Below are positions 50,591 through 62,400 of a stretch of DNA of 64,000 bases, piece by piece. The stretch's first letter is position 1. Each line of letters opens with the position of its first letter. Origin of the DNA: Perkinsus chesapeaki ATCC PRA-425 (Eukaryota > Protista > Perkinsozoa); the NCBI GenBank assembly GCA_013115145.1, contig JAAPAO010000090.1, positions 19,808 through 83,807 of the forward strand, written 5' to 3'. The translations under genes were made by a program, and so were the position numbers. Below the pieces are notes generated by a model. It was not told the DNA's origin. It did not search any database and saw only the letters and a program-made list of their open reading frames with translations.

Positions 50591-53500
50591 CTAGTCGTCA
50601 GTGGTAGAAGTGGCCTGTCCAGAACACTTCATCTCTATCAGAGTATCGCCCTCATTGCCACGGAACACGATCGTATCCTTCTGGCTGTCGTAGTCGGCCA
50701 CTATCTCATCACCCCGCTGAATCTTCTCGCGCAGTATCTGGAAAATAACAAGGTGGAACTACGCCAAGGAGACGAGTTTTATAAGTAGATAGCGGAAGTT
50801 TTACCCATGTAAGTACTCACCAGCTCGGCAATCGGGTCTTCTACCCTCGATTGCATCACCCGGTTAAGATGGCGCGCGCCGAACTCAGCACTGTATCCTT
50901 CTCGGCCCAGAGCAGCTGTTAACCTGACGTACACGAAAACGCCTCGATGACACCCTTCTAACGGGAAGTTCCACTTGTCTGTGATACTGAGCTGTATGCT
51001 GTATTGATCCGCTAAGGCAGTCTTAAGACGCTTCGCGTACAAGCCCACGACTTTAACGATGTCTTCTTCTGTGAGACTAGCGAAGGGGATGACCTGGAGC
51101 CAGCTACCGTACAGCCGAGTGATTCAGCGGCCTACCTCGTCGATACGGTTGATGAACTCTGGACGGAAGTATCGTTTGAGATCATCCAAGCTGCTGCCGA
51201 CATTCGACGTCATAACAAGGATGACGTTGGAGAAGTCAGCGAGTCGGCCATGGCTATCGGTTAGTCTTCCGTCATCCATCACCTACATAATGAAAATACA
51301 CTTGATAGAAAATAAGAATATTAATTACTTGTAGAAGGATATTAAGGACATCAGGATGAGCTTTCTCCACCTCATCGATCAACACTAGACTATGAGGCTG
51401 TCTACGGACTTTGTCGGTAAGAACGCCGCCGGAGTTCGAATCGTATCCGACGTAACCGGGCGGGGAGCCAATAAGTTTCGAGACGCTGTGACGCTCCATA
51501 AACTCGGACATGTCTAGCCTTATCTGAAGCATTGAGAAGGTTCTTACCGCATTTACCGAGGAAAGCCTTACCATGTTGCGGCCTTCCTCGCCGAAGTACT
51601 CATCAGATAGAGCCTTGCTGAGTTCAGTTTTACCAACCCCAGTCGGGCCGCAGAAAAGGAAGCAGGCTGTTGGCCGTTTGTTCCCGACACCTGAAGTGAT
51701 TCAACCACTCGAGTGCCACAATAACTATTTCACCTCTAACACCGACGCGAGCTCGCCGTATTGCTTTTGCAACGGCGCTGGTCGCCCTCTTCTGCCCGAT
51801 CACTCGAGAGTCTAGTCTGTCCTCGAGATTGAGTAGTCTGACGGATTCGTCCTTTGTCAGCTGAAACAGAACAATATCAAAGACGGTAGAGGTTTAAAAA
51901 CTGCCCAACCTCTTCGAGGGGTATGCCCGTCCACTGAGCAACGGTTCGCGCCACGTCATTTGCTGTCACTTCTACCCGACTGCTCGGTCGCTGAAAGTGA
52001 GCCTACAAAGTAGCCGCTCGGCTACATTGCATACCGCTCCTTGTTGAATTCTTTTTCGAGCAGCGGCCTCATCCATGGCATCAAGCGCCGAGTCGGGCAG
52101 CCGCCGACTTGGGACGTACCGCGATGATAGTTTCACACATGCTTCTATGGCATCATCCGTGAACCTGAGAAAGCGATGGGGATTCACAAGTGGAGGCTAG
52201 ATGCTTACCGAACAAAGTGATGCTCCTCATAAAGGCTAGCAACACCCATGAGCATGTCTATAGCTTGCTCTTGAGTTGGCTCGGCAACCACCACTGGCTG
52301 GAACCGACGTTCGAGCGCTGGATCCTTGGCAATGTACTGAAAGTAACGCACTCTGGTCAGGCAGGACTGCGGGGACGTATGGAGCATAAGATCGAGCAAG
52401 AGGGACCTCACTTATACATCACGGATAAGTAGAAGGACTCATAAGTCATGAATCTATGTGTTATACTCGGTCATTCATTTAGTCAATTCTATGACAACCC
52501 TTCCAACGGGCTATAATTCTACAGTACTAGATGACCGACGGCGAGGTGTAAGTGACGGTAGATAGGGTGACAGAGGTGTCTACTTTATCATATTCCGATT
52601 GTGTAGTGGCACCGATGACTCGTAGCTCTCCACGACTGAGGGCAGGCTTGAGGATGTTAGCGGCGTCCATTGCGCCATCCCCGGTGGCGCCAGCACCCAC
52701 TATAGTGTGAAGCTCATCGATGAGGAGAATGATCTGGAAAGCAATATCAAACATAAAAGTGACCTTTATTGCGAGTTCACCTTTCCATTCGCGTCGGTTG
52801 CTTCCTTGACGAGGCTTTTAAGCCTCTCTTCGAACTCTCCCCTGTATTTGGTACCGGCAAGTAGACTGCCTATAGAGACGTCCCATATTGCGACATCTGT
52901 TAGATGGCTAGGGACTTCACCACCAGCTATTAACTGAGAGATAAACAGTGATGGCCAAAGCTGCTTCGGCACACCTACCTGAGCGAGGCCTTCGGCGACG
53001 GCGGTTTTGCCCACGCCAGGTTCGCCGAGGAGAACGGGATTATTCTTAGTCATCCGACTCAGCACTTGCACCATTCTGGCTATCTCAGCATCTCGTCCGA
53101 CACACTTTAGAAGTTTGCCTTCTCGTGCCAAAGCTGTCAGGTTTCGGCCACATGACTGTAAAACACTGCCACCCGAGGTCCCTGGCACGAATCCCGCAGC
53201 GGGTATTTTCTCAGTGTCACTGTTGTCTTGTTCCTCGTCAAGCCTCCGCAAGATGTCCTGCAACCTTCCCCTAAGCGTTGCCTCCATTTCTATCGCAGCA
53301 GGCCTCGTAAGCATCCTATTGATGACAGTCTCTAGGAGCTCCTCGGTAGTGACCGGCCCTTCACTTTTCTCTATCCTTCCTCGTACTGCTTCTACAACCT
53401 CCTCATCGAGAGGGACTCGCTCTACTGCTCCCCAAGCAACTCGATCTCCCAAGCTCAGCGACGGTAAATGTTTGATCTCCGAAATATGGACACCGGCCTC

Positions 53501-54218
53501 TCGGAGCAGTTTGCTAGCCCCACCGCTCCGTTCCGCAGCCAGGCCGATGAGAAGACCCTCCAGAGGCACCGATGCAAGATTAACACATTCCTCTTGTGCG
53601 CGGTGTATCGCTCTGACAGAGGAATCGGATAGGGCATCGAATGCAGTCTTCCCTATTTGCCGCCTGGCGGCATCACCTGAGAATGACGGGGGTTGAAGAA
53701 GCCCTCTAGAAAAGCGCAGCTGGAAAGGGGGGCATCGAGGGTATTGAAAGGCAGCTCACCTCTATTAGGATCAAACATCATATTGTTCCACCACCCAGCT
53801 AAGGAGCCTCGCGACACTCTGTTATCCCTAAAGAGTTTCCGCTGAGTAACAACTGTGACTGAGTAGCTTACTGGCGAACTCTCTTCCGTGATAATCCGAC
53901 TCCTACCACAAGAAGGGCGGCCACACCAGCCGCAGCTGCTGCACCGAACAGGTACTGCCGCGATGAGACATCTTGCTTCGAGAGCCGACCTCTCGAGGAC
54001 AACGCCCCAGCTGCGGTGTTAGCGAGGACAGGACTCCCTCGTAGGCTGACGGACGTGGCGGCCCTCGAGGAGGCGATGAATAGGTTTGAACAACAGGAGT
54101 AGATGGCCAGGAGACATATGCCACAGATCAGTAGTTTGGCAGTAGAGGCTCTTCCGCGATGCGGTCTTGAAATGCCGAGTCCTCTCCGTGTCGGTCCAAT
54201 GGTGCCATTGTGTTGCAT
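50591..54218 (-). CDS. clpC: Hsp100/ClpC-like AAA+ chaperone with putative plastid-targeting leader
   Basis: Clp N-domain (AIHRAQEEC...LLIGLAAE), NBD1 ([41 protein letters not shown]), NBD2 ([40 protein letters not shown]). Stop 50591-50593. Confidence 0.9.
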
Positions 54219-54386: not shown

Positions 54387-57367
54387 TTATTGTGATATCT
54401 CTCTATCCGGCTGTGGTTGCTGCCGACGACGTCCGTCCGCTGGGCTTGGGTCGTCCATACCAAGTACTTCAACTTCCGCTGGCATCTGTCAAGCAACTTT
54501 AACGTCAACTGCAATGGCCACACTTACCCCTGTATTCCACTCCTCTTTGTTATCTTGATCTCCTTCGCCATCAACTCCCAGAATCTAGCAGCAAAGTGTC
54601 AGCATATGGACGATGATCAATGGACTCAGTGGTCTACCTCAACATCTCCGAAGTACTCCATTACTGCCTCAGCATCATTAACAAAGTCGTCCTCTGCGGC
54701 ATCAGATTCAGAGAAGCTAGATTTGCGATCCTCTCGCATCGACGGCGATCCCTGCCGGACTATAACCACAGCAAACTTCGATTGAACCTACCTCGAGGAC
54801 CAGGCCTTCCAAGAAGTCAGCGACCTTCTTGCGGCCATGCCTCTTAGCCTCATCATAAGGTGTGTTGCCCCACCTATCGTGTGTGTTAAGGTGGGCTCCT
54901 GCATCCCTCAGAAGCTTCACCGCATTCAGGCAACCTGATGGACAGTTACCCTCTCCAAAAGGTAATAGCCTACCTGAAGCTGCCGCCAAATGCACTGCCG
55001 TTCTGTTGTCATAGTCCATAACGTCCGGGTCAACGCCGAGCTGCAGAAGATACTGCACCTGTTCACAAAGCACTTGCCACTGACAGAGGGTGGAGATGTA
55101 GTTACAGTATAGACGTCTTTGCTAGCGCATGCCATTATAAGCTGATTCGTCAACTCGTGCTTCACTGACCCATAGTAAAGGGTGGGATCAACGTGGCGAT
55201 CGCTGGCTCGAAGGACAGGATCATGCCGCTTGAAAAGGTGGAAGTTGAAGGACTCCTCCATATGGTAGAAAAAATCAAGGCCCTTGCGACTCAGCTGAAA
55301 ACAACACCGGCAATAAGCCTCGGGACCTTTGCTCACACCAACGCTTACAGAATAGGATTCCTCGGAGGTGCCGTACTTTCGGATCGTCTCCTCTGCCGAG
55401 GTCTTCCCGAACTCGGAACTGGGACAGTGCACACAAGCACCAAGCACGCCTGGTACCACTGCCATACCAGCACCGAGATTTGAGTTTTTGCCAGGAATAC
55501 CGAGGTTGTACGCCCACATGCCGGACCTGATGATGAAGATGAAGGAGCGACTCCTACAAAGGAAAGATGGTGAAGAAACTATGGAATACAAGTTATGGAA
55601 CTCGATGGAATACAAGGAATCAAGGTGGAAAGCGTTAGGTGGAGGATATGGAACAAAATGGCTAAGAGTCTATTAGCCATTTTGTAATTTTCTCTTAGTA
55701 AGAGAATTGATAATACTAACAACATCACTGAAGTGGGAGTGAGCCTCTCCAGCAAGCGAGGAACACTTGTTGAGTTGATAGGCATCGATCTGCTGCTTAC
55801 CTTTGATCCATACCGCAGGAATACATCAAACTGAGAGCGTAGCGAATAGTTTGGTCTTGGAATATCCGCTCATTCGTCATCGGACACACACCACTATTCG
55901 CGAACGAGGAAGCCACTGCAGCGACGTCAGCCACGTTAACCTGAATAATATGCAGCATGCTGGGATCGAACCTGCGACCTTTCGTATAAACGAACCTCTC
56001 GCTCGTGCGTCTGGAACATGAGCTCTATAGCATCATCGATACCAGCACCATCAGGAAACCGATGAATCGACCGCAGACGATAAGCCATGCTTCTCGCCAA
56101 ATCAGAGTGTCTAAGAGAAGCCAATATTCAAATCAAACGGCGCGCGCCACTAAATCCTTACCTTCTATCCAGCTTCTTTCCCAGCTCCGTAGCTTCTGGT
56201 GGAACTATATCAGAGCCACTGAGCCTCATCCAGTTTTCCAAAACCTTCGCCAAGGATGGCCGGACACCAACTCCCGTGCTGAGAAGGAAGTGCTTCACCC
56301 CGCACCACCGCGCCTACTTACTAATCCTTATCTAGCTCCCTCGAAAGGAGCGCGCATAAATTAATAGTGCCCATCATCACGAATGGATTGTGAGGTCTGG
56401 CAAGATACTTGAGGCTGTATGGATGATGATGCCTCACCTGTTGAGATGATCCAATCCCATATAGGTCTGTTTCTCTCCGCTTGGCTCTCGTCCCATCCAT
56501 TTATGCACTTCATCCAGCCCAAGCATCTCCACTGCCATACAGTAGAGGACTGGACGTATCAACCCACCAGTTGGGAACGTCATCAGAGACTGCCTTGGCA
56601 GCTGGATAGGCGAGCAATCCGATAGGCCGCTGCATGCCGTGGGAGATCCTAAAGGTGGACGTATCAGCAATAGATACGCGGACGACTGCAGTACGTTACC
56701 AATAGGAATCTCCTCATCTCGGGCATACTGCTGCCCATCTGTGGTGCAAACTCCGACGGTCAAGAGTTCTTGATCTGGATGCTGCTCACAGGAGGCGGCG
56801 AAACACTCGTTCTATAAAAGCCAAAGATGCGCTCGATTAGATTCGGACTGGCGATTTTTTCCCTCCCAAGTGAGGTCACGAATCACCAGACTCGACAGAT
56901 ATCAACTCACCAGACGGTGCGTGAATTTAGGCCAGTTCGGTACGATCAGCTTTCCGCAGAGAGCTTTCACTGCAATGTCATGCTTGCGCGCGATCCTCGA
57001 GAACTCGTCGGCCGAATATCTACCAAAGATGCTAACTGATCAGGGTGCAGCAACTCAGCTTACAGCGCCTCTGGGTCCCCCATAAGGTGCATATCTTCAG
57101 GTACAGATATGGCATCGGTCATCCCGCCAACCTTCACGCTGCTATACCAGCCCAAATCCTAAGCAAACCAGACTTGAGCACCAGAAATAACTGAGGTCGG
57201 AGCCTTGCCTGAAGGAGAGCCTCGATCCTCGGGGCATCTCGTGGTAAGCCATACCATTCCAATGCACGAATTAAACGACGTGAATCCAAAGGCCAAGGCA
57301 TATCCGCAAAGTACCTGGAGGGATAGTAATACACCGCTTGAAACTCCCCCGAATTTGATATTTTCAT
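54387..57367 (-). CDS. Glutaminase-like ankyrin protein lacking catalytic residues (pseudoenzyme)
   Basis: GLS fold motifs in order (VCTTDGQ, YCMAVEMLG..VH..GREPSG, HNPF, FANSGVCPMTNER, MYSCGM, GIPGK) plus ankyrin repeats (DYDNRTAVHLAA, DRWGNTP). SxxK is replaced by GLIR. Confidence 0.85.
55951..55995 (-). pseudogene. tRNA-like 3' half forming most of a 55-bp intron (55941-55995)
   Basis: AGGTC GCAGG TTCGATC CCAGC ATGCTGC A: variable loop, T-arm with one mismatch, 7-nt acceptor strand and discriminator. Confidence 0.45.
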
Positions 57368-57599
57368 TCATGCGCCCAGTGAGCTGGAAGGCAGCTTGGG
57401 AGCCTGGGTTGTCTACCAGAGAGAGGACAAGGAGTTTTCTTCACACTTGATGAAGCATACACGCACCGTACACAACGCAAGTCGTGAAAGATAATTTATA
57501 GTAGTTTGATCACAACTCAGTGGTGACAATTCTCAGGGACCTGGCAACTAGTCCCCTTCATAGCTTTTCCAGAGTGGCATCTTCAAACCACTGCAGCAG

Positions 57600-57960
57600 T
57601 GCACACCTCCGCAGCAAAGCATCAGGTCATAGGCGCTGACTAGGATGAAAAGTTGCCTGCAAATTCGCCAAGTCACACTCCGCTGCTTGAAGCTCAGAAA
57701 TTTTGGGTCCAAATCGGAGATGGCCTAGATGAATGATTCCACCGGTCTGCCATCCTGTTCGAGGACACCGCCGATAGCATAGTGTGACGCGTCCGTGTTG
57801 ACGTTGAAAGGCACATTCAAGTCGGGGTGCATCAAACCTCGGGAATCGCGAAGCCGTTGAGGCTCGGGAGCATTCCTGAAACTAATTGCTTTCAGGTGAC
57901 GAAAACGAATGCTCCGGCTGGGAGTGGGACATTCACATCGCCACGCAGTCAGGCGAATTA
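57600..57960 (-). mobile_element. Ty3/Gypsy LTR-retrotransposon pol remnant (RT connection/RNase H)
   Basis: F.HLK...HPDLNVPFNVNTDASHYAIGGVLEQDGRPV followed by stops and frameshifts. Confidence 0.8.
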
Positions 57961-58089
57961 TGCCGGGTCAGTAGGGCGTACCGCGCAGGTAGCAAGACCG
58001 CATCCTCGAACGATTAGCTGGGCGAGTTAAGTTGTAGATTCGACATTCGTGGGTGCCAGGATAGAATCCCAGGAGACGGCTTCCTACTG

Positions 58090-58211
58090 ACAGTAGGCTA
58101 CTCTGTAACAGAGTAGGCTACTTCTAACAGTAGGCTACTGTACAGTAGTCGCTACACGGTATATCGTACAGTGCTACTGTACGATATACCGTGTAGCGAC
58201 GCTACAGTAGC
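58090..58211. repeat. Short tandem repeats (agtaggctact x3) followed by a perfect 25-bp inverted repeat with 3-nt loop
   Basis: gtcgctacacggtatatcgtacagt (58148-58172) - gct - actgtacgatataccgtgtagcgac (58176-58200). Confidence 0.95.
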
Positions 58212-58369
58212 ATCGGATCGTAGTTTCGACGATACGAATTCTTACGATCAACTCACTAGCCGGGTAGCCGACTTTGAAGCTGTCAAACAGCTTCCGAGGA
58301 GCATTATCCTGGCCAGGACACGCCTCACGGACATTTGGCCCCGGCGCAAATCCGCCTCACGGAGTGGAG

Positions 58370-61300
58370 TTACATGATACTGTGTGCATGATACCAACTG
58401 TTTGAATGGACTCCACGGTAGGAAACTAACACAGAACCCCCTGGGTATGGGTACCTTGCCAGGACTATGTCTCCATCATCTTTCGGGGCTGACATAGGCG
58501 GACGGGTCTTTCGCAGAGCTATACCACGTCTGAGCTCTCGAACGCAATTCTGGTGCCCCTCGCGACAGGCATCCTAGAAATATGTATAATACGACAAAGT
58601 ACCGCCAGCCTTACCATAAGCGGGGTATTCGTATAGCGGTCCTTCGACTCTGGATCCGCACCCAAACACATGAGTAGCTTAGCTGTCTCCCTGTGTCCAT
58701 TAGATACTGCCAGATGCAGTGCAGTGCGGAGATCGTAATCGGGCGTACGTACGTCGATTCCTCTGAAAGATGCAGCAGCGTAAGCTAGTAACAGGTTGAT
58801 ACGGGGAGATCACGGCTCACCTAGCTGCTAAGTGTCTTATTCTAATTGCATCTCCAACTGCAGCACTCCACCACAAACTTGAGTACTCCGTCAAGGAGAA
58901 GTTAGTGAGCACGTCAACTGAGGTAAGAGACATATTTACTACCTTAAGCTACATGAGCCGTACTTTGAGCGCTTGTCCGCCATCGGAAGGTATCCCCAAG
59001 GCAGTTGCGAATACGATGTTCCACTAGAGGGTGATTAGGAGGGTTAGTTGCCTGAAGCGAACAGGAAACAAAACAGAAATACAAAAAAGGCAATATCGAT
59101 GGCCACCACCGCAACAGATGCCTACCTCGTCAGTAATGGTATCTTGTGGCCCACCAAATGCATGCACAGGCAAGCGCTTGGAGAGCATCTGGCAAAACTT
59201 TACGCCGCGGACTGAGTTGCCGAGGGCATCCAATCTCGGAGAAAATGTGGCGATTCCACAAACGCCGGGAATTACTATACACAGTACTCCCGATACCTGA
59301 CAGTGAGAATAGCAAAGCTAAGTGACTCGTAACAGACTTACTCCTGACTTGGCCGGAAACCCACAGGTAAAGGCAAACTCGCCAGAGTAGTCATACATAC
59401 CACAGCTCATCATCATGGATAAACAAGAGGACACAGTGTCCTGACTAAACACACGTTCACCTGAAGGAGCAGACAGTGGCATAACGACGTCTCAGAGAGC
59501 TGTTAAACCATACCTGTCTTTGGACAGATGCCGCCGTTCGCCAAAGTGGCTGCGACAACTGACATCTGCTCGCAATCGAGCTCCAATGAGCACCTGCAAC
59601 GTCTATGGGAATCCCAGAGGTCCCGCGAACTCACCATTGGAAGTAGGATTCGAGAGTCTTCTGGATATCGGTATTCGGAGGGAAAGCGTTCTCCTCGGCC
59701 ATCATATAAGCAAGGCAGTAATTACGATTAGCAGTAGCTCGCTCGCCCATAAAAGTATCATACCTTACCAAAAGGGGAGTGATAAGATAATGCGACAAAG
59801 CTACTTACTGAATATGAGGGCGCCTGGACATACCCCCCAAATGTTGCCATATCTCTGTTACTGTCTCATAACGTTCCCATTCTGATTTATCCATATATAG
59901 AAGTGAGGATACCATTATAGCACCTACACCAGACATTCCCAAACTTGCTTGCACATCACCCCGTAATAGTGTTATACTACACTAACCATATCAGCATCGG
60001 TTACAGGTTACTAAGATTCAGCCCCCCTTACAGTAAGCATGTGTGAATAGTTATTATCATTAGCCACTAGGGGGCCACATTGTGCTAGGTGGTCTCCCAT
60101 TATACCCCCTCCCTATACTACCAGCATTGATTAAAGGGTTATGTGGTATCCCCTTGGGCTTTAATAGGACTCTTTCATTAAAATTCCGTCCACTTGGTTC
60201 GTGTCCGACATGCTCATGTACCTTATTAACAGCTCGTTCGAAAAAGTACTCCACTAGCAACAGGAAAAACTTCACACCAAGATTCCCTTCAACTGCACAC
60301 CATCGATTTGCGCACCGGGATTTCACCGTTGAGATTCTTTCGGGTTTGTTACAATTTCCTCTCAACTCTACAAGATCGAAACGCCATCCATTCCGTAATA
60401 TATCCGTCGACCTTTCCCATCCCTCCAGTCCAAAGCCACCCACCCTTAAACAGTACCTTATCTTTCCCATGTAACTCTACTGCCATACAGTAGTTAAGAG
60501 GCTTGCACGTTGACTGTAGACAGAATGGCACCTGAGAGATAAGCCTTAGTCGGGGATGCTGGGCCACGTCCTGCCTTGCTGTCACCAATACAGTAACGTT
60601 GAGCATGAACACTGCAAACACTAATCGCCCAGTAATCTGGATTCACAGTCGCCAAGGTTGGAATGTAGTCGGCCTGAAGGAACCCTGAGATTCACGCGCC
60701 ACGAAATTCCCTTTGTTACGTTTTTGCCTTCAGTACAATCTTGTAGATCTTTATATGCGTCATTAATAACATCACAGAACGCTTCAAAATCTGATATGGC
60801 CAACTCACCGCGGAATGCTTTGCCGACCTGAACCGATCTTCGCTGCGCCACGAAATTGCCACTTACGAGCTCATTGCTGGTCTTTAGTGTCTGGAATCGC
60901 TCAAAGTCCACAAAGTCTTGGCTCTTCAATTCCTTGTACGTATTTCGCATACGCCCATCCGAAGTAGCTGAGTCAAGCGAAAGGATGCATGTAAGATACA
61001 CTATGAGATTCCAATGACGGTGGTGACGACGCGTAAAACCCAAGATCTGTGTAACTCCTCAAGTAGCTCGTATTCACTACAGCAGCACTGCGATCAACGT
61101 AAATCACCCCGGTTGCCATCTCAACCTCGAAATCCGGGCAATGTCACAACCCCGTCTGCGAGAGACAGAAATATTTCCCCGACTTGCATCACAACAGGAG
61201 ATATATCTCCTGCATTACAATGACCCCGTACTACCCAATCCCGACCTCTTCAGAAACTGCAGGAGCTTAACGCTGTCCACTTTACCATTCTCGTCGGGCT

Positions 61301-61395
61301 ACTTTGAAAAACGTCATTGCTGTTTCATCCACCAGTATCCTTCCTACCTCCAATGCCTTGAAGATATCTTTGGAAGATATCTTACCTCGACCCAT
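58370..61395 (-). CDS. GLS: Glutaminase (GLS-type, with ankyrin repeats), catalytic residues intact; 3' end approximate
   Basis: [13 protein letters not shown] (SxxK), [71 protein letters not shown], ankyrin [12 protein letters not shown]. Confidence 0.95.
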
Positions 61396-62009
61396 GTTAG
61401 ATACTAGGCGAGCTCGAGCGAGGGGCGTACTAAAAACGTTAAACTAGCTATTAACATGATATTCCAGAAATTATAGAAAGCAATGAGGAGCTTGCTCCAA
61501 TGCGCATACATCATCATTTTAGCGACACTAGAGAAAATGTGAGATTCTCATCATGGCAGTAGCCGTTGATTTGCGATCAGACTACGCGAGAAAAGAATAT
61601 TCTTCGGAATCTACTGCAAAGCCAACCGCCAAGGTAAGCTCAGATATGCGATACTCTCGGGGAAACGATAATGGCTTTCCTCGACACTAGAAGACTAGCA
61701 GCAGTTTTCCGGTGGAAAGGACCACCCTCCTTCCGCACTAGCCTAGGATTCTAATATGTGACAATAATGACTAATATCCGAAGCTCGTCGAGTATGACAG
61801 TTAGCCTTGTTGGTTGAGTCTCCGTTCCAGTACACCATCTCCAATCGAGAACGGCCACAACCACCCTCACAGCTAGATAAAGTACACACTAACACTGAGA
61901 GATATACAAATCCACCGTTATCTGTATTTTAGAAAGAAGGTTCTATTGCCTCCTGTATCCCCACCAGTGAGAAAATGTATCTATTCCTCCCCAACTATCA
62001 TCCCGTTCA

Positions 62010-62400
62010 CTACTCGTCCTCATCATATCCTCTATCGCTCGAATTCTCACTGAAGCTGGCATGCCGATGAGCTCTACCGCCAACCTCAGATACGCATCTT
62101 GAAGAGGTCGGAGATGATGCTGATGGAGATGTCAGATCCTCCCCGTTCGGCGCTCCTTTCGCTGGTGATCTGAAACTCCGTGTAAATGACGGAAGACCAA
62201 GGAAAGCGTGACACCTGGGTAGAGGATACCGGCTAGACCGGTCAAGGTCGATCGTCATCTTGGGGGTGCCTGACCATAAACACTTATACGTTTCCCCGTT
62301 TCCCTCTGTTATGGTACTTGTCTTTGATGACTGGAAGGTCTCTTTGGCGGCCATTGAACGAGCACCGCAATCAACGTAAAACTTGAAGCAGCACTGCAAT
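62010..62400 (-). CDS. Hypothetical Ser-rich protein/exons
   Basis: 129-codon frame ending ...RGYDEDE*. No motif. Confidence 0.35.

What the first reader, a model, noticed from the sequence alone, without database searches (positions are those of the whole stretch)
54387..61395. Active glutaminase in tandem with an intact but catalytically dead glutaminase paralogue
Seen: two same-strand glutaminase-ankyrin genes about 1 kb apart. The 58370-61395 copy has all catalytic motifs (STCK at 60502-60513, NPLINAG, GER...NRN, ESYFQ, GMYDY). The 54387-57367 copy aligns along the domain but has FPTGGLIRP for FCLQSTCKP (Ser to Gly, Lys to Arg, 56554-56565), HNPFVMMG (Asn lost), ELMFQ (Tyr lost) and GMDQRSG (Tyr lost). 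In the exons I traced it shows no premature stop or frameshift and keeps its splice sites, the ankyrin repeats and a new acidic tail. Established: GLS-type glutaminases use the Ser-x-x-Lys/Tyr active site and are regulated by oligomerisation. Inference: loss concentrated at the active site in a maintained gene points to a pseudoenzyme acting as a regulatory subunit, scaffold or metabolite sensor for the adjacent enzyme. I do not know of a described glutaminase/pseudo-glutaminase pair.
Basis: partly seen in the sequence, partly recalled or inferred. Interest (0 to 1): 0.75.

Follow-up and report, generated by a model that had tools for sequence, protein, structure and literature searches.

The report
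One glutaminase gene, live plus dead halves
The two "neighbouring genes" are most likely the two halves of one Perkinsus chesapeaki gene whose protein joins a working glutaminase to a long-conserved, catalytically dead copy of itself, a layout shared by several single-celled eukaryotes and not described in the papers I could search.

Summary
The sequence observation holds. There are two minus-strand units, each with a glutaminase domain and ankyrin repeats. The upstream unit has every catalytic residue. The downstream unit has lost them: Ser286 to Gly, Lys289 to Arg, Asn335 to Met, Tyr466 to Asp, with Tyr249, Glu381, Asn388 and Tyr414 also gone.

The two-gene reading is probably wrong. The window lies on the Perkinsus chesapeaki contig that carries KAF4673144.1. 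A GT donor at 58454 and an AG acceptor at 57315, both phase 2, join the units as ...DIVLAR|YFADMPWPLD.... P. marinus and P. olseni proteins have exactly this junction. My model has 35 exons and 1,297 aa, with no internal stop.

At least eleven proteins in the collection, most of them uninterrupted ORFs on metagenome contigs, carry the same live-then-dead order. Dead units and live partners form congruent, strongly supported clades. Between P. chesapeaki and P. marinus the dead unit is 83% identical and the live unit 89%. AlphaFold2 folds a two-unit relative as one body (pTM 0.86).

The dead unit is therefore a maintained pseudoenzyme, probably a built-in partner of the live unit. That role is inferred, and no RNA data or dN/dS were available.

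The parts
54387..62354 (-). Whole coding region of one gene as modelled here: 35 exons, 3,894 nt of coding sequence, 1,297 aa, from the ATG at 62354 to the stop at 54387-54389. It corresponds to NCBI KAF4673144.1 (FOL47_010990), with corrections.
   Evidence: Protein-to-genome spliced alignment guided by P. marinus and P. olseni proteins. The assembled ORF has no internal stop; 32 introns are GT-AG and 2 are GC-AG, with a median length of 48.5 nt.
58455..62354 (-). Unit 1 (exons 1-19, aa 1-650): N-terminal helical domain, active glutaminase domain and ankyrin repeats.
   Evidence: Pfam PF04960 and ankyrin hits on exon pieces. All 12 tabulated active-site positions match the active consensus once the SxxK exon is included. 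It is 89% identical to P. marinus and 91% to P. olseni.
60457..60531 (-). Exon 9, which carries the catalytic Ser-x-x-Lys ([25 protein letters not shown]; STCK at 60502-60513). The NCBI model of this gene skips this exon.
   Evidence: Aligned to human GLS and GLS2 'FCLQSCVKP'. The motif stretch [18 protein letters not shown] is identical in P. marinus, and the exon match is 93% identical overall. P0030 (the NCBI model) lacks it.
60532..60574 (-). 43-nt GC-AG intron just upstream of the SxxK exon. It is the probable reason the automatic annotation missed that exon.
   Evidence: donor aag|GCAGGACG, acceptor CTCTCAG|gtg. No GT donor gives the frame needed (reading).
57315..58454 (-). Inter-unit intron, 1,140 nt, phase 2, GTACCC...CTCCAG.
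   Evidence: Splicing here gives ...DIVLAR|YFADMPWPLDSRRLIRALEWYGLPRD, which is the same junction as in P. marinus P0026 and P0144 and P. olseni P0156. There are 11-19 stops in each frame.
57728..57967 (-). Degenerate fragment of a retrotransposon RT-RNase H inside the large intron. The NCBI model spliced part of it in as an exon.
   Evidence: PF17919 E 1.4e-7, 31.9 bits against a cut-off of 29.8. Five diverged relatives (53-66% aa identity) lie elsewhere in the genome. P0030 contains this peptide and carries a PF17919 label.
58148..58200 (.). Perfect 25-nt inverted repeat with a 3-nt loop inside the large intron. Its meaning is unknown.
   Evidence: also seen as a self-match.
54387..57314 (-). 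Unit 2 (exons 20-35, aa 651-1297): N-terminal helical region, degenerate glutaminase domain, ankyrin repeats and an acidic tail.
   Evidence: Pfam PF04960 hits on exon pieces (39.8 bits for 55800-56024; weaker elsewhere) and ankyrin hits. It is 83% identical to P. marinus. A custom profile scores about 300 bits for unit 2 against 536-613 bits for unit 1 in the Perkinsus proteins.
56554..56568 (-). GGLIR, which replaces Q-S-x-x-K: Gln285 to Gly, Ser286 to Gly, Lys289 to Arg.
   Evidence: phmmer alignment to GLS2 4bqm; in full-length numbered chains (8gwr_B, 9pia_A) query residues 82-115 match chain residues 285-318. Coordinates.
56369..56392 (-). HNPFVMMG, which replaces HNPxxNAG: Asn335 to Met.
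   Evidence: Met occupies this column in 9 of 10 dead units.
55806..55808 (-). Asp codon at the position of catalytic Tyr466 (GMDQR in place of GMYDY).
   Evidence: Query residues 26-72 match chain residues 419-465 in full-length numbered chains, so residue 73 (Asp) falls at position 466. Asp occupies this column in 9 of 10 dead units.
54792..55058 (-). Ankyrin repeats of unit 2 (exons 31-32).
   Evidence: Ank_4 E 2.1e-12 and Ank_2 E 1.4e-7 on piece 54720-55121.
58615..58762 (-). Ankyrin repeat exon of unit 1.
   Evidence: Ank E 8e-9 and Ank_2 E 7e-8 on piece 58522-58809.

Best explanation
This is one gene of Perkinsus chesapeaki, with orthologues in P. marinus and P. olseni. It encodes a protein of about 1,300 residues built from two complete KGA/GLS2-like units in series. 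Each unit has an N-terminal helical domain, a serine-type glutaminase domain and ankyrin repeats. Unit 1 has the full catalytic set and is the enzyme. Unit 2 has lost the nucleophile Ser286, the base Lys289, the lid Tyr249 and the substrate-binding Asn335, Glu381, Asn388, Tyr414 and Tyr466, so it should not hydrolyse glutamine by the known mechanism. It is nevertheless kept under purifying selection. Solved GLS enzymes work as dimers that pair into tetramers and filaments. I therefore propose that the dead unit packs against the live unit as a built-in, asymmetric 'second protomer'. In that role it would supply the dimer interface, the partner ankyrin bundle and a remodelled activation loop, and so set or regulate the activity and assembly of the single live site. 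Shown here: the two units, the residue losses, the conserved junction, the conservation across species and the shared fold. Inferred: splicing across the 1,140-nt intron in this species, the cis packing and the regulatory role.
For: Residue losses are shown. Junction: a phase-matched GT donor at 58454 and AG acceptor at 57315 give DIVLAR|YFADMPW, identical to P. marinus XP_002771580.1 and XP_002775417.1 and to a P. olseni model. NCBI also models one gene here, KAF4673144.1, on a contig of 83,807 nt, which matches the window's contig end. Eleven relatives have live-then-dead units in one protein (P0001, P0002, P0003, P0021, P0025, P0028, P0029, P0031, P0146, P0147, P0155), most on metagenome contigs. 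P0028's ORF is uninterrupted on an intron-poor eukaryotic contig beside TIMELESS, Efg1 and CKS genes. Tree: ten dead units form a clade (SH-aLRT 100), their nine partners form a clade (100), and the three subclades are the same in both. Constraint: unit 2 is 83% and unit 1 is 89% identical between P. chesapeaki and P. marinus. Seven former active-site or nearby columns switched to a new residue that is conserved in the dead clade: K289R, N335M, Y466D, D467E, F to W, C to H and I to L. The activation-loop Phe318 is Glu or Gln in 10 of 10 dead units. Fold: AlphaFold2 of the two-unit relative P0001 gives pLDDT 84 and pTM 0.86, with matching secondary structure in both halves. The dead unit P0005 folded alone aligns to GAC, KGA and GLS2 at Z 36 over about 345 residues, and reaches the ankyrin repeats in two near-full-length chains. 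Roles of Ser286, Lys289, Tyr249, the activation loop and the ankyrin bundle are taken from PMC10912226.
Against: No RNA evidence was available for the 58455|57314 splice, and the 1,140-nt intron is more than 20 times the median intron length. Read-through of the donor meets a stop after 28 codons, and an in-frame Met (YFAD-M-PWPLD) follows the acceptor. Separate products by intron retention or trans-splicing are therefore conceivable. The model's coordinates are not exposed, so I could not check that the predicted packing resembles the GLS dimer; pTM is an indirect measure. The structural models are of relatives (P0001, P0005), not of the Perkinsus protein.
Confidence: 0.6

Rival explanations
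1. One reading: two separate genes or products, an active glutaminase and a stand-alone pseudo-glutaminase that regulates it in trans as a hetero-oligomer subunit.
For: An in-frame stop lies 28 codons past the donor (58370) and an ATG at 57367. A conserved in-frame Met follows the acceptor. The gap is unusually long for an intron here. Perkinsus uses spliced-leader trans-splicing (my own knowledge, not tested here).
Against: The donor and acceptor are phase-matched and reproduce the junction seen in three other Perkinsus protein models. The peptides that only a two-gene reading would create (YPYPGGSV...SIM and MKISNSGEFQAVYYYPS) are absent from the P. marinus and P. olseni models and from the five metagenomic relatives whose sequences I read. 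Relatives encode both units in one uninterrupted ORF. The gap holds a retroelement remnant, which explains its size.
Confidence: 0.12
2. Unit 2 is not merely a scaffold. It has a new function of its own, either binding a small molecule as a sensor or catalysing a different reaction with a remodelled pocket.
For: Former catalytic positions did not drift freely. They switched to new residues that are conserved in 8-9 of 10 dead units (Arg, Met, Asp, Glu, Trp, His), and the activation loop has its own motif, PSG[EQK]x[EQ][TD].
Against: The position of the nucleophile varies (Gly, Cys, Ser, Ala). Of 116 columns conserved in active units, 67 are not conserved in the dead clade, including the SPRLDxxGNS loop. 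An Arg-Asp pair plus Met could simply fill the old pocket. No ligand evidence exists.
Confidence: 0.2
3. Unit 2 is a decaying relic: a duplicated half on its way to becoming a pseudogene or untranslated exons.
For: Loss of all catalytic residues. Branches of the dead units are longer than those of their partners: 1.6 to 3.7 times for close pairs.
Against: It is an intact reading frame of 647 codons over 16 exons with working splice sites. It is 83% identical to P. marinus and 98.9% identical between the two P. marinus copies. The same dead unit is kept in distant relatives, with co-divergence, and it folds confidently.
Confidence: 0.03

Closest known systems
Human kidney-type and liver-type glutaminases (KGA/GLS, GLS2; e.g. 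PDB 5uqe, 8gwr, 8szl)
   Same: Each unit has the same three-part build: N-terminal helical domain, PF04960 glutaminase domain and C-terminal ankyrin repeats. Unit 1 of relative P0001 aligns to GAC at Z 50 with 39-43% identity. The dead unit of P0005 aligns at Z 36 with 28-31% identity.
   Different: The human enzymes are single units that form homo-oligomers, with every protomer active. Here two units are in one chain and the second lacks all catalytic residues.
Perkinsus marinus 'glutaminase, putative' XP_002771580.1 and XP_002775417.1; P. olseni FOZ60_006444; P. chesapeaki KAF4673144.1
   Same: These are orthologues, or this gene's own record. They have the same two units and the same junction.
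   Different: The records give only a generic name, and none notes the dead half. The P. chesapeaki model skips the SxxK exon and includes a transposon-derived exon. The P. olseni model stops early in unit 2.
Two-unit glutaminases of other protists
   Same: Two GLS-ankyrin units in one protein.
   Different: The state of each unit differs among them. Both units are active in Palpitomonas bilix P0023 and in P0027 and P0034. The first unit is dead and the last active in Mucochytrium quahogii P0032 (transcript-derived), in P0033 and in Aphanomyces invadans P0006. The second unit is dead in P0018. Whether the dead units share one origin is unresolved (p-AU 0.28).
Tandem enzyme plus pseudoenzyme proteins such as JAK kinases (pseudokinase JH2 beside kinase JH1)
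   Same: A duplicated catalytic domain in one chain, one copy dead and used to control the live one. This analogy comes from my own knowledge.
   Different: The fold and chemistry are unrelated, and the regulatory role here is untested.
Inactive glutaminase-like domain of carbamoyl phosphate synthetase 1, and viral pseudo-amidotransferases
   Same: Glutamine-hydrolysing domains that lost catalysis but were kept as structural or partner modules (papers listed: PMC4655335, PMC7605207).
   Different: Those are class I amidotransferase folds, not the beta-lactamase-like GLS fold.

Membership tests
GLS-type (serine-dependent, PF04960) glutaminase: unit 1 | Match to the PF04960 profile above the curated cut-off | tested here: met
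   Exon pieces score 31-58 bits against a cut-off of 27. The orthologue's unit 1 scores 613 bits on a custom GLS-ankyrin profile.
GLS-type (serine-dependent, PF04960) glutaminase: unit 1 | Catalytic Ser286-x-x-Lys289 plus Tyr249, Asn335, Glu381, Asn388, Tyr414 and Tyr466 | tested here: met
   [12 protein letters not shown] (60502-60513), [21 protein letters not shown] and GMYDY are all present.
GLS-type (serine-dependent, PF04960) glutaminase: unit 2 | Homology to and fold of the glutaminase domain | tested here: met
   PF04960 scores 39.8 bits on piece 55800-56024, with weaker hits on two other pieces. PDB GLS hits have E 5e-8 and 3e-5. The relative's dead unit aligns to GAC at Z 36.
GLS-type (serine-dependent, PF04960) glutaminase: unit 2 | Catalytic Ser286-x-x-Lys289 plus Tyr249, Asn335, Glu381, Asn388, Tyr414 and Tyr466 | tested here: not met
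   Gly, Arg, Asp, Met, Asp, Ala, Met and Asp occupy these positions. Unit 2 is therefore a homologue, but should not be filed as an active glutaminase.
KGA/GLS2-like architecture | C-terminal ankyrin repeats after the glutaminase domain | tested here: met
   Ankyrin families hit pieces 58522-58809 (unit 1) and 54720-55121 (unit 2).
KGA/GLS2-like architecture | N-terminal EF-hand-like helical domain (PF17959) | tested here: inconclusive
   No Pfam hit on the window pieces I scanned (60624-61058 and 57137-57367). PF17959 is precomputed for the P. marinus and P. olseni proteins. The P0005 model aligns to GAC from residue 141 onward, which covers that domain.
Pseudoenzyme | Homologue of an enzyme that lacks the catalytic residues yet is kept by selection | tested here: met
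   Residue loss. Maintenance: intact ORF, 83% identity across Perkinsus species, and a co-diverging clade of ten dead units. dN/dS was not computed.
Pseudoenzyme | No catalytic activity in an assay | not testable with these tools
   This needs purified protein.
Two-unit (tandem) protist glutaminase | Both units encoded in one polypeptide | tested here: inconclusive
   Shown for relatives by uninterrupted ORFs and by one transcript-derived ORF. For this window it rests on a phase-matched GT-AG pair and an identical junction in three other Perkinsus models. There is no RNA evidence.

The most novel reading that the evidence does not exclude
Tandem live-plus-dead glutaminases may be a distinct, widespread class of protist enzyme. 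In this reading the pseudo-unit acts as a covalently attached allosteric partner that gates the single active site through its remodelled activation loop and pocket. One unit would have been silenced more than once: in the C-terminal unit in Perkinsus and its relatives, and in the N-terminal unit in Mucochytrium and Aphanomyces.
Probability: 0.25. Interest if true: 0.75.

Novelty: new variant of a known kind. Interest (0 to 1): 0.55.

Why it matters
GLS-type glutaminases are heavily studied because their activity depends on dimer, tetramer and filament assembly and on an activation loop at the protomer interface. A natural protein that hard-wires one live and one dead protomer into a single chain would give three things. 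It is an evolutionary experiment on what the second protomer contributes apart from catalysis. It adds a new pseudoenzyme family. It also offers a defined asymmetric system for studying activation. For Perkinsus, a parasite of oysters and clams, this locus holds the only PF04960 matches found in the genome, so it is probably the main route from glutamine to glutamate. On the practical side, the public P. chesapeaki model needs correction: it omits the catalytic SxxK exon and contains a transposon-derived exon.

Tried and rejected
1. The look-up of encoding contigs for the P. marinus loci was closed. I therefore had no P. marinus DNA, no intron-size comparison and no dN/dS.

2. I scanned metagenome contigs with P0028 to find a close pair for dN/dS. 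The only close relative (L007, 88% identity) covers residues 1-340 of unit 1 only, so it says nothing about the dead unit.

3. Folding the Perkinsus protein itself was not possible. P0026 is over the 1,200-residue limit, and the window's joined model has no reference, so I folded relatives P0001 and P0005 instead.

4. The joined 1,297-aa model was not sent to any database, family or structure tool. Only stop-free exon pieces were sent, by reference. The joined sequence was used only inside local scripts for alignment, identity counts and the tree.

5. I could not check whether the AlphaFold2 packing equals the GLS dimer, because model coordinates are not exposed and chain-wise fold searches see one unit at a time.

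6. The question of one or several origins for all dead units is unresolved. The best tree groups them weakly (SH-aLRT 80-90). Holding the Mucochytrium-type dead units with their own live partners is not rejected (p-AU 0.28).

7. Literature searches for pseudo-, tandem or duplicated glutaminase and for Perkinsus glutaminase found nothing relevant. The library lacks most subscription journals, including the 2017 JBC paper on glutaminase evolution that I recall, so absence there is weak evidence.

8. Rfam found nothing in the window.

9. I did not use the third large protein search, because naming more taxa would not change the verdict.
Full report
**What is in the sequence**

The window is G000:C3393:19808-83807 of a 41.7-Mb assembly. 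Between 54.3 and 62.4 kb the minus strand carries short stop-free pieces separated by short introns. Pfam scans of those pieces, sent by reference, find Glutaminase (PF04960) and ankyrin repeats twice over: in 58.5-60.7 kb and again in 54.7-56.8 kb. These are the only PF04960 matches in the genome.

STCK is at 60502-60513 and GGLIR is at 56554-56568.

**Organism and existing records**

A protein search returned KAF4673144.1, 'hypothetical protein FOL47_010990, partial [Perkinsus chesapeaki]'. It has 1,334 aa and lies on a contig of 83,807 nt, which equals the end coordinate of the window's contig. The window is therefore P. chesapeaki.

That record, two P. marinus proteins (XP_002771580.1 of 1,231 aa and XP_002775417.1 of 1,264 aa, both 'glutaminase, putative') and a truncated P. 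olseni model (755 aa) all run through both units or across the junction between them.

**Gene model**

I wrote a protein-to-genome spliced aligner and guided it with the P. marinus and P. olseni proteins. The combined model has 35 exons, 3,894 nt of coding sequence and 1,297 aa. It runs from the ATG at 62354 to the stop at 54387-54389 with no internal stop. It has 34 introns with a median length of 48.5 nt; 32 are GT-AG and 2 are GC-AG.

Exons, on the minus strand:

- Unit 1: 62354-62318, 62269-62215, 62175-62014, 61429-61348, 61298-61235, 60967-60867, 60827-60720, 60673-60575, 60531-60457, 60221-60122, 59923-59809, 59763-59635, 59593-59514, 59460-59342, 59296-59126, 59051-58964, 58917-58821, 58762-58615, 58573-58455.
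- Unit 2: 57314-57209, 57158-57064, 57019-56911, 56811-56700, 56648-56438, 56396-56322, 56278-56162, 56110-55996, 55940-55801, 55526-55349, 55294-55106, 55058-54974, 54934-54792, 54751-54638, 54584-54528, 54485-54387.

The first three exons and the 57209 donor (a GC donor) are the least certain parts of the model.

The joined protein was used only inside local scripts. It was not sent to any database, family or structure tool, so that step is left out.

**One gene or two**

Its donor (aag|GTACCC) and acceptor (CTCCAG|g) are both phase 2. Splicing gives ...[10 protein letters not shown]|YFADMPWPLDSRRLIRALEWYGLPRD.... The stretch DIVLAR|YFADMPWPLDSRRLIRALEWYGLPRD is found unchanged in both P. 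marinus proteins and in the P. olseni model.

The peptides that only a two-gene reading would create have no counterpart in those proteins or in the metagenomic relatives whose sequences I read. The intron holds a degenerate retrotransposon RNase H fragment at 57728-57967 (PF17919, E 1.4e-7), which has diverged kin elsewhere in the genome. This accounts for the intron's size. It also accounts for a spurious exon in the NCBI model.

The NCBI model also skips exon 9, the SxxK exon. The likely reason is that the intron before it has a GC donor.

No RNA data were available, so cis-splicing in this species is inferred. I put it at about 0.8.

**Catalytic residues**

I built a profile from 108 single-unit relatives and aligned every unit to it. 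Unit 1 has Tyr249, Gln285, Ser286, Lys289, Asn335, Glu381, Asn388, Tyr414, Tyr466 and the KSGV motif. Unit 2 has Asp, Gly, Gly, Arg, Met, Asp, Ala, Met, Asp and KNSN at the same positions.

Alignment of the exon pieces to solved human chains with full-length numbering confirms Gln285 to Gly, Ser286 to Gly, Lys289 to Arg and Tyr466 to Asp. The roles of Ser286 (nucleophile), Lys289 (base), Tyr249 (lid) and Phe318 (activation loop) are described in PMC10912226.

**Relatives**

A search of 1.8 billion representative proteins with an exon piece of unit 2 found proteins of 898-1,041 aa that carry a live unit followed by a dead unit in one chain. Further searches raised this to eleven such proteins plus one dead-unit fragment, P0005. 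Most come from metagenome contigs.

One of them, P0028, is an uninterrupted ORF on a gene-dense contig beside TIMELESS, Efg1 and CKS genes, so it comes from an intron-poor eukaryote.

Other protists have two-unit glutaminases in different states:

- Both units active: Palpitomonas bilix P0023, P0027 and P0034.
- First unit dead: Mucochytrium quahogii P0032 (a complete transcript ORF), P0033 and Aphanomyces invadans P0006.
- Second unit dead: P0018.

**Evolution and constraint**

In a tree of 58 units, the ten Perkinsus-type dead units form one clade and their nine live partners form another. Both clades have SH-aLRT support of 100 and contain the same three subclades. The live-plus-dead chain was therefore already present in the clade's ancestor, and both halves have diverged together since.

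Between P. chesapeaki and P. marinus, unit 1 is 89% identical and unit 2 is 83%. The two P. marinus copies are 98.6% identical in unit 1 and 98.9% in unit 2.

Of 116 columns conserved in active units, the dead clade keeps 42, has lost conservation at 67, and has switched 7 to a new conserved residue: K289R, N335M, Y466D, D467E, F to W, C to H and I to L. The activation loop keeps its length but has its own motif, PSG[EQK]x[EQ][TD], and Phe318 is replaced by Glu or Gln in all ten dead units.

Whether the dead units of other lineages share this origin is open. The best tree joins them weakly. The alternative, in which the Mucochytrium-type dead units are held with their own live partners, is not rejected (p-AU 0.28).

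**Structure**

AlphaFold2 on P0001 (898 aa, two units, 20-row alignment) gives a mean pLDDT of 84 and a pTM of 0.86. The secondary-structure pattern is the same in both halves. Its first unit aligns to GAC at Z 50.

The dead unit P0005 folded alone gives pLDDT 74 and pTM 0.62. It aligns to GAC at Z 36 over about 345 residues at rmsd of about 3 Å and 28-29% identity. Against near-full-length KGA and GLS2 chains it aligns out to the ankyrin repeats, at rmsd above 10 Å.

A pTM of 0.86 for a two-unit chain suggests a defined packing between the units. I could not inspect the interface.

**Interpretation**

It is most likely a domain of the same protein and not a neighbouring gene. The best-supported mechanism is a built-in asymmetric pseudo-dimer in which unit 2 supplies interface, ankyrin partner and activation-loop contacts to the single live site. 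A ligand-sensing role for the remodelled pocket is a live alternative.

I found no description of such an arrangement in the searchable literature, but that library is incomplete.

**Limits**

The structural models are of relatives only. The inter-unit interface was not examined.

Noticed in passing
window 60532-60574 and 57159-57208 (minus strand): Two of the gene's 34 introns appear to use GC-AG rather than GT-AG. The first sits just before the catalytic SxxK exon and probably caused the public gene model to skip that exon.
   Followed up: partly
window 54387-62354 (minus strand): Introns are tiny: the median is 48.5 nt and 26 of 34 are between 39 and 58 nt.
   Followed up: partly
window 58148-58200: A perfect inverted repeat with 25-nt arms and a 3-nt loop lies inside the 1,140-nt intron, near a 19-nt direct repeat pair at 58084-58139. 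Its function and origin are unknown.
   Followed up: no
window 57728-57967 (minus strand): A short, degenerate retrotransposon RT-RNase H remnant (PF17919) lies in the intron. Five diverged relatives are on other contigs of the genome.
   Followed up: partly
P0026 and P0144 (P. marinus, contigs of 504,701 and 1,018,260 nt): P. marinus has two copies of the whole two-unit gene, about 99% identical at the protein level. They may be haplotypes or a recent duplication. P. chesapeaki shows one locus.
   Followed up: no
L006:5140-5946 (+), and protein P0031: In two distant relatives a CKS (cyclin-dependent kinase subunit) gene sits directly upstream of the two-unit glutaminase. In P0031 it is merged into the predicted protein. 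This may be conserved gene order.
   Followed up: no
L008:1762-4441: On an unrelated metagenome contig, a single-unit glutaminase-ankyrin gene lies next to a glutamine synthetase gene and near a PHO4 phosphate transporter gene.
   Followed up: no
window 50591-54218: A Clp/Hsp100-type ATPase gene lies just downstream on the same strand. It is the subject of another first-stage note, and I did not examine it.
   Followed up: no
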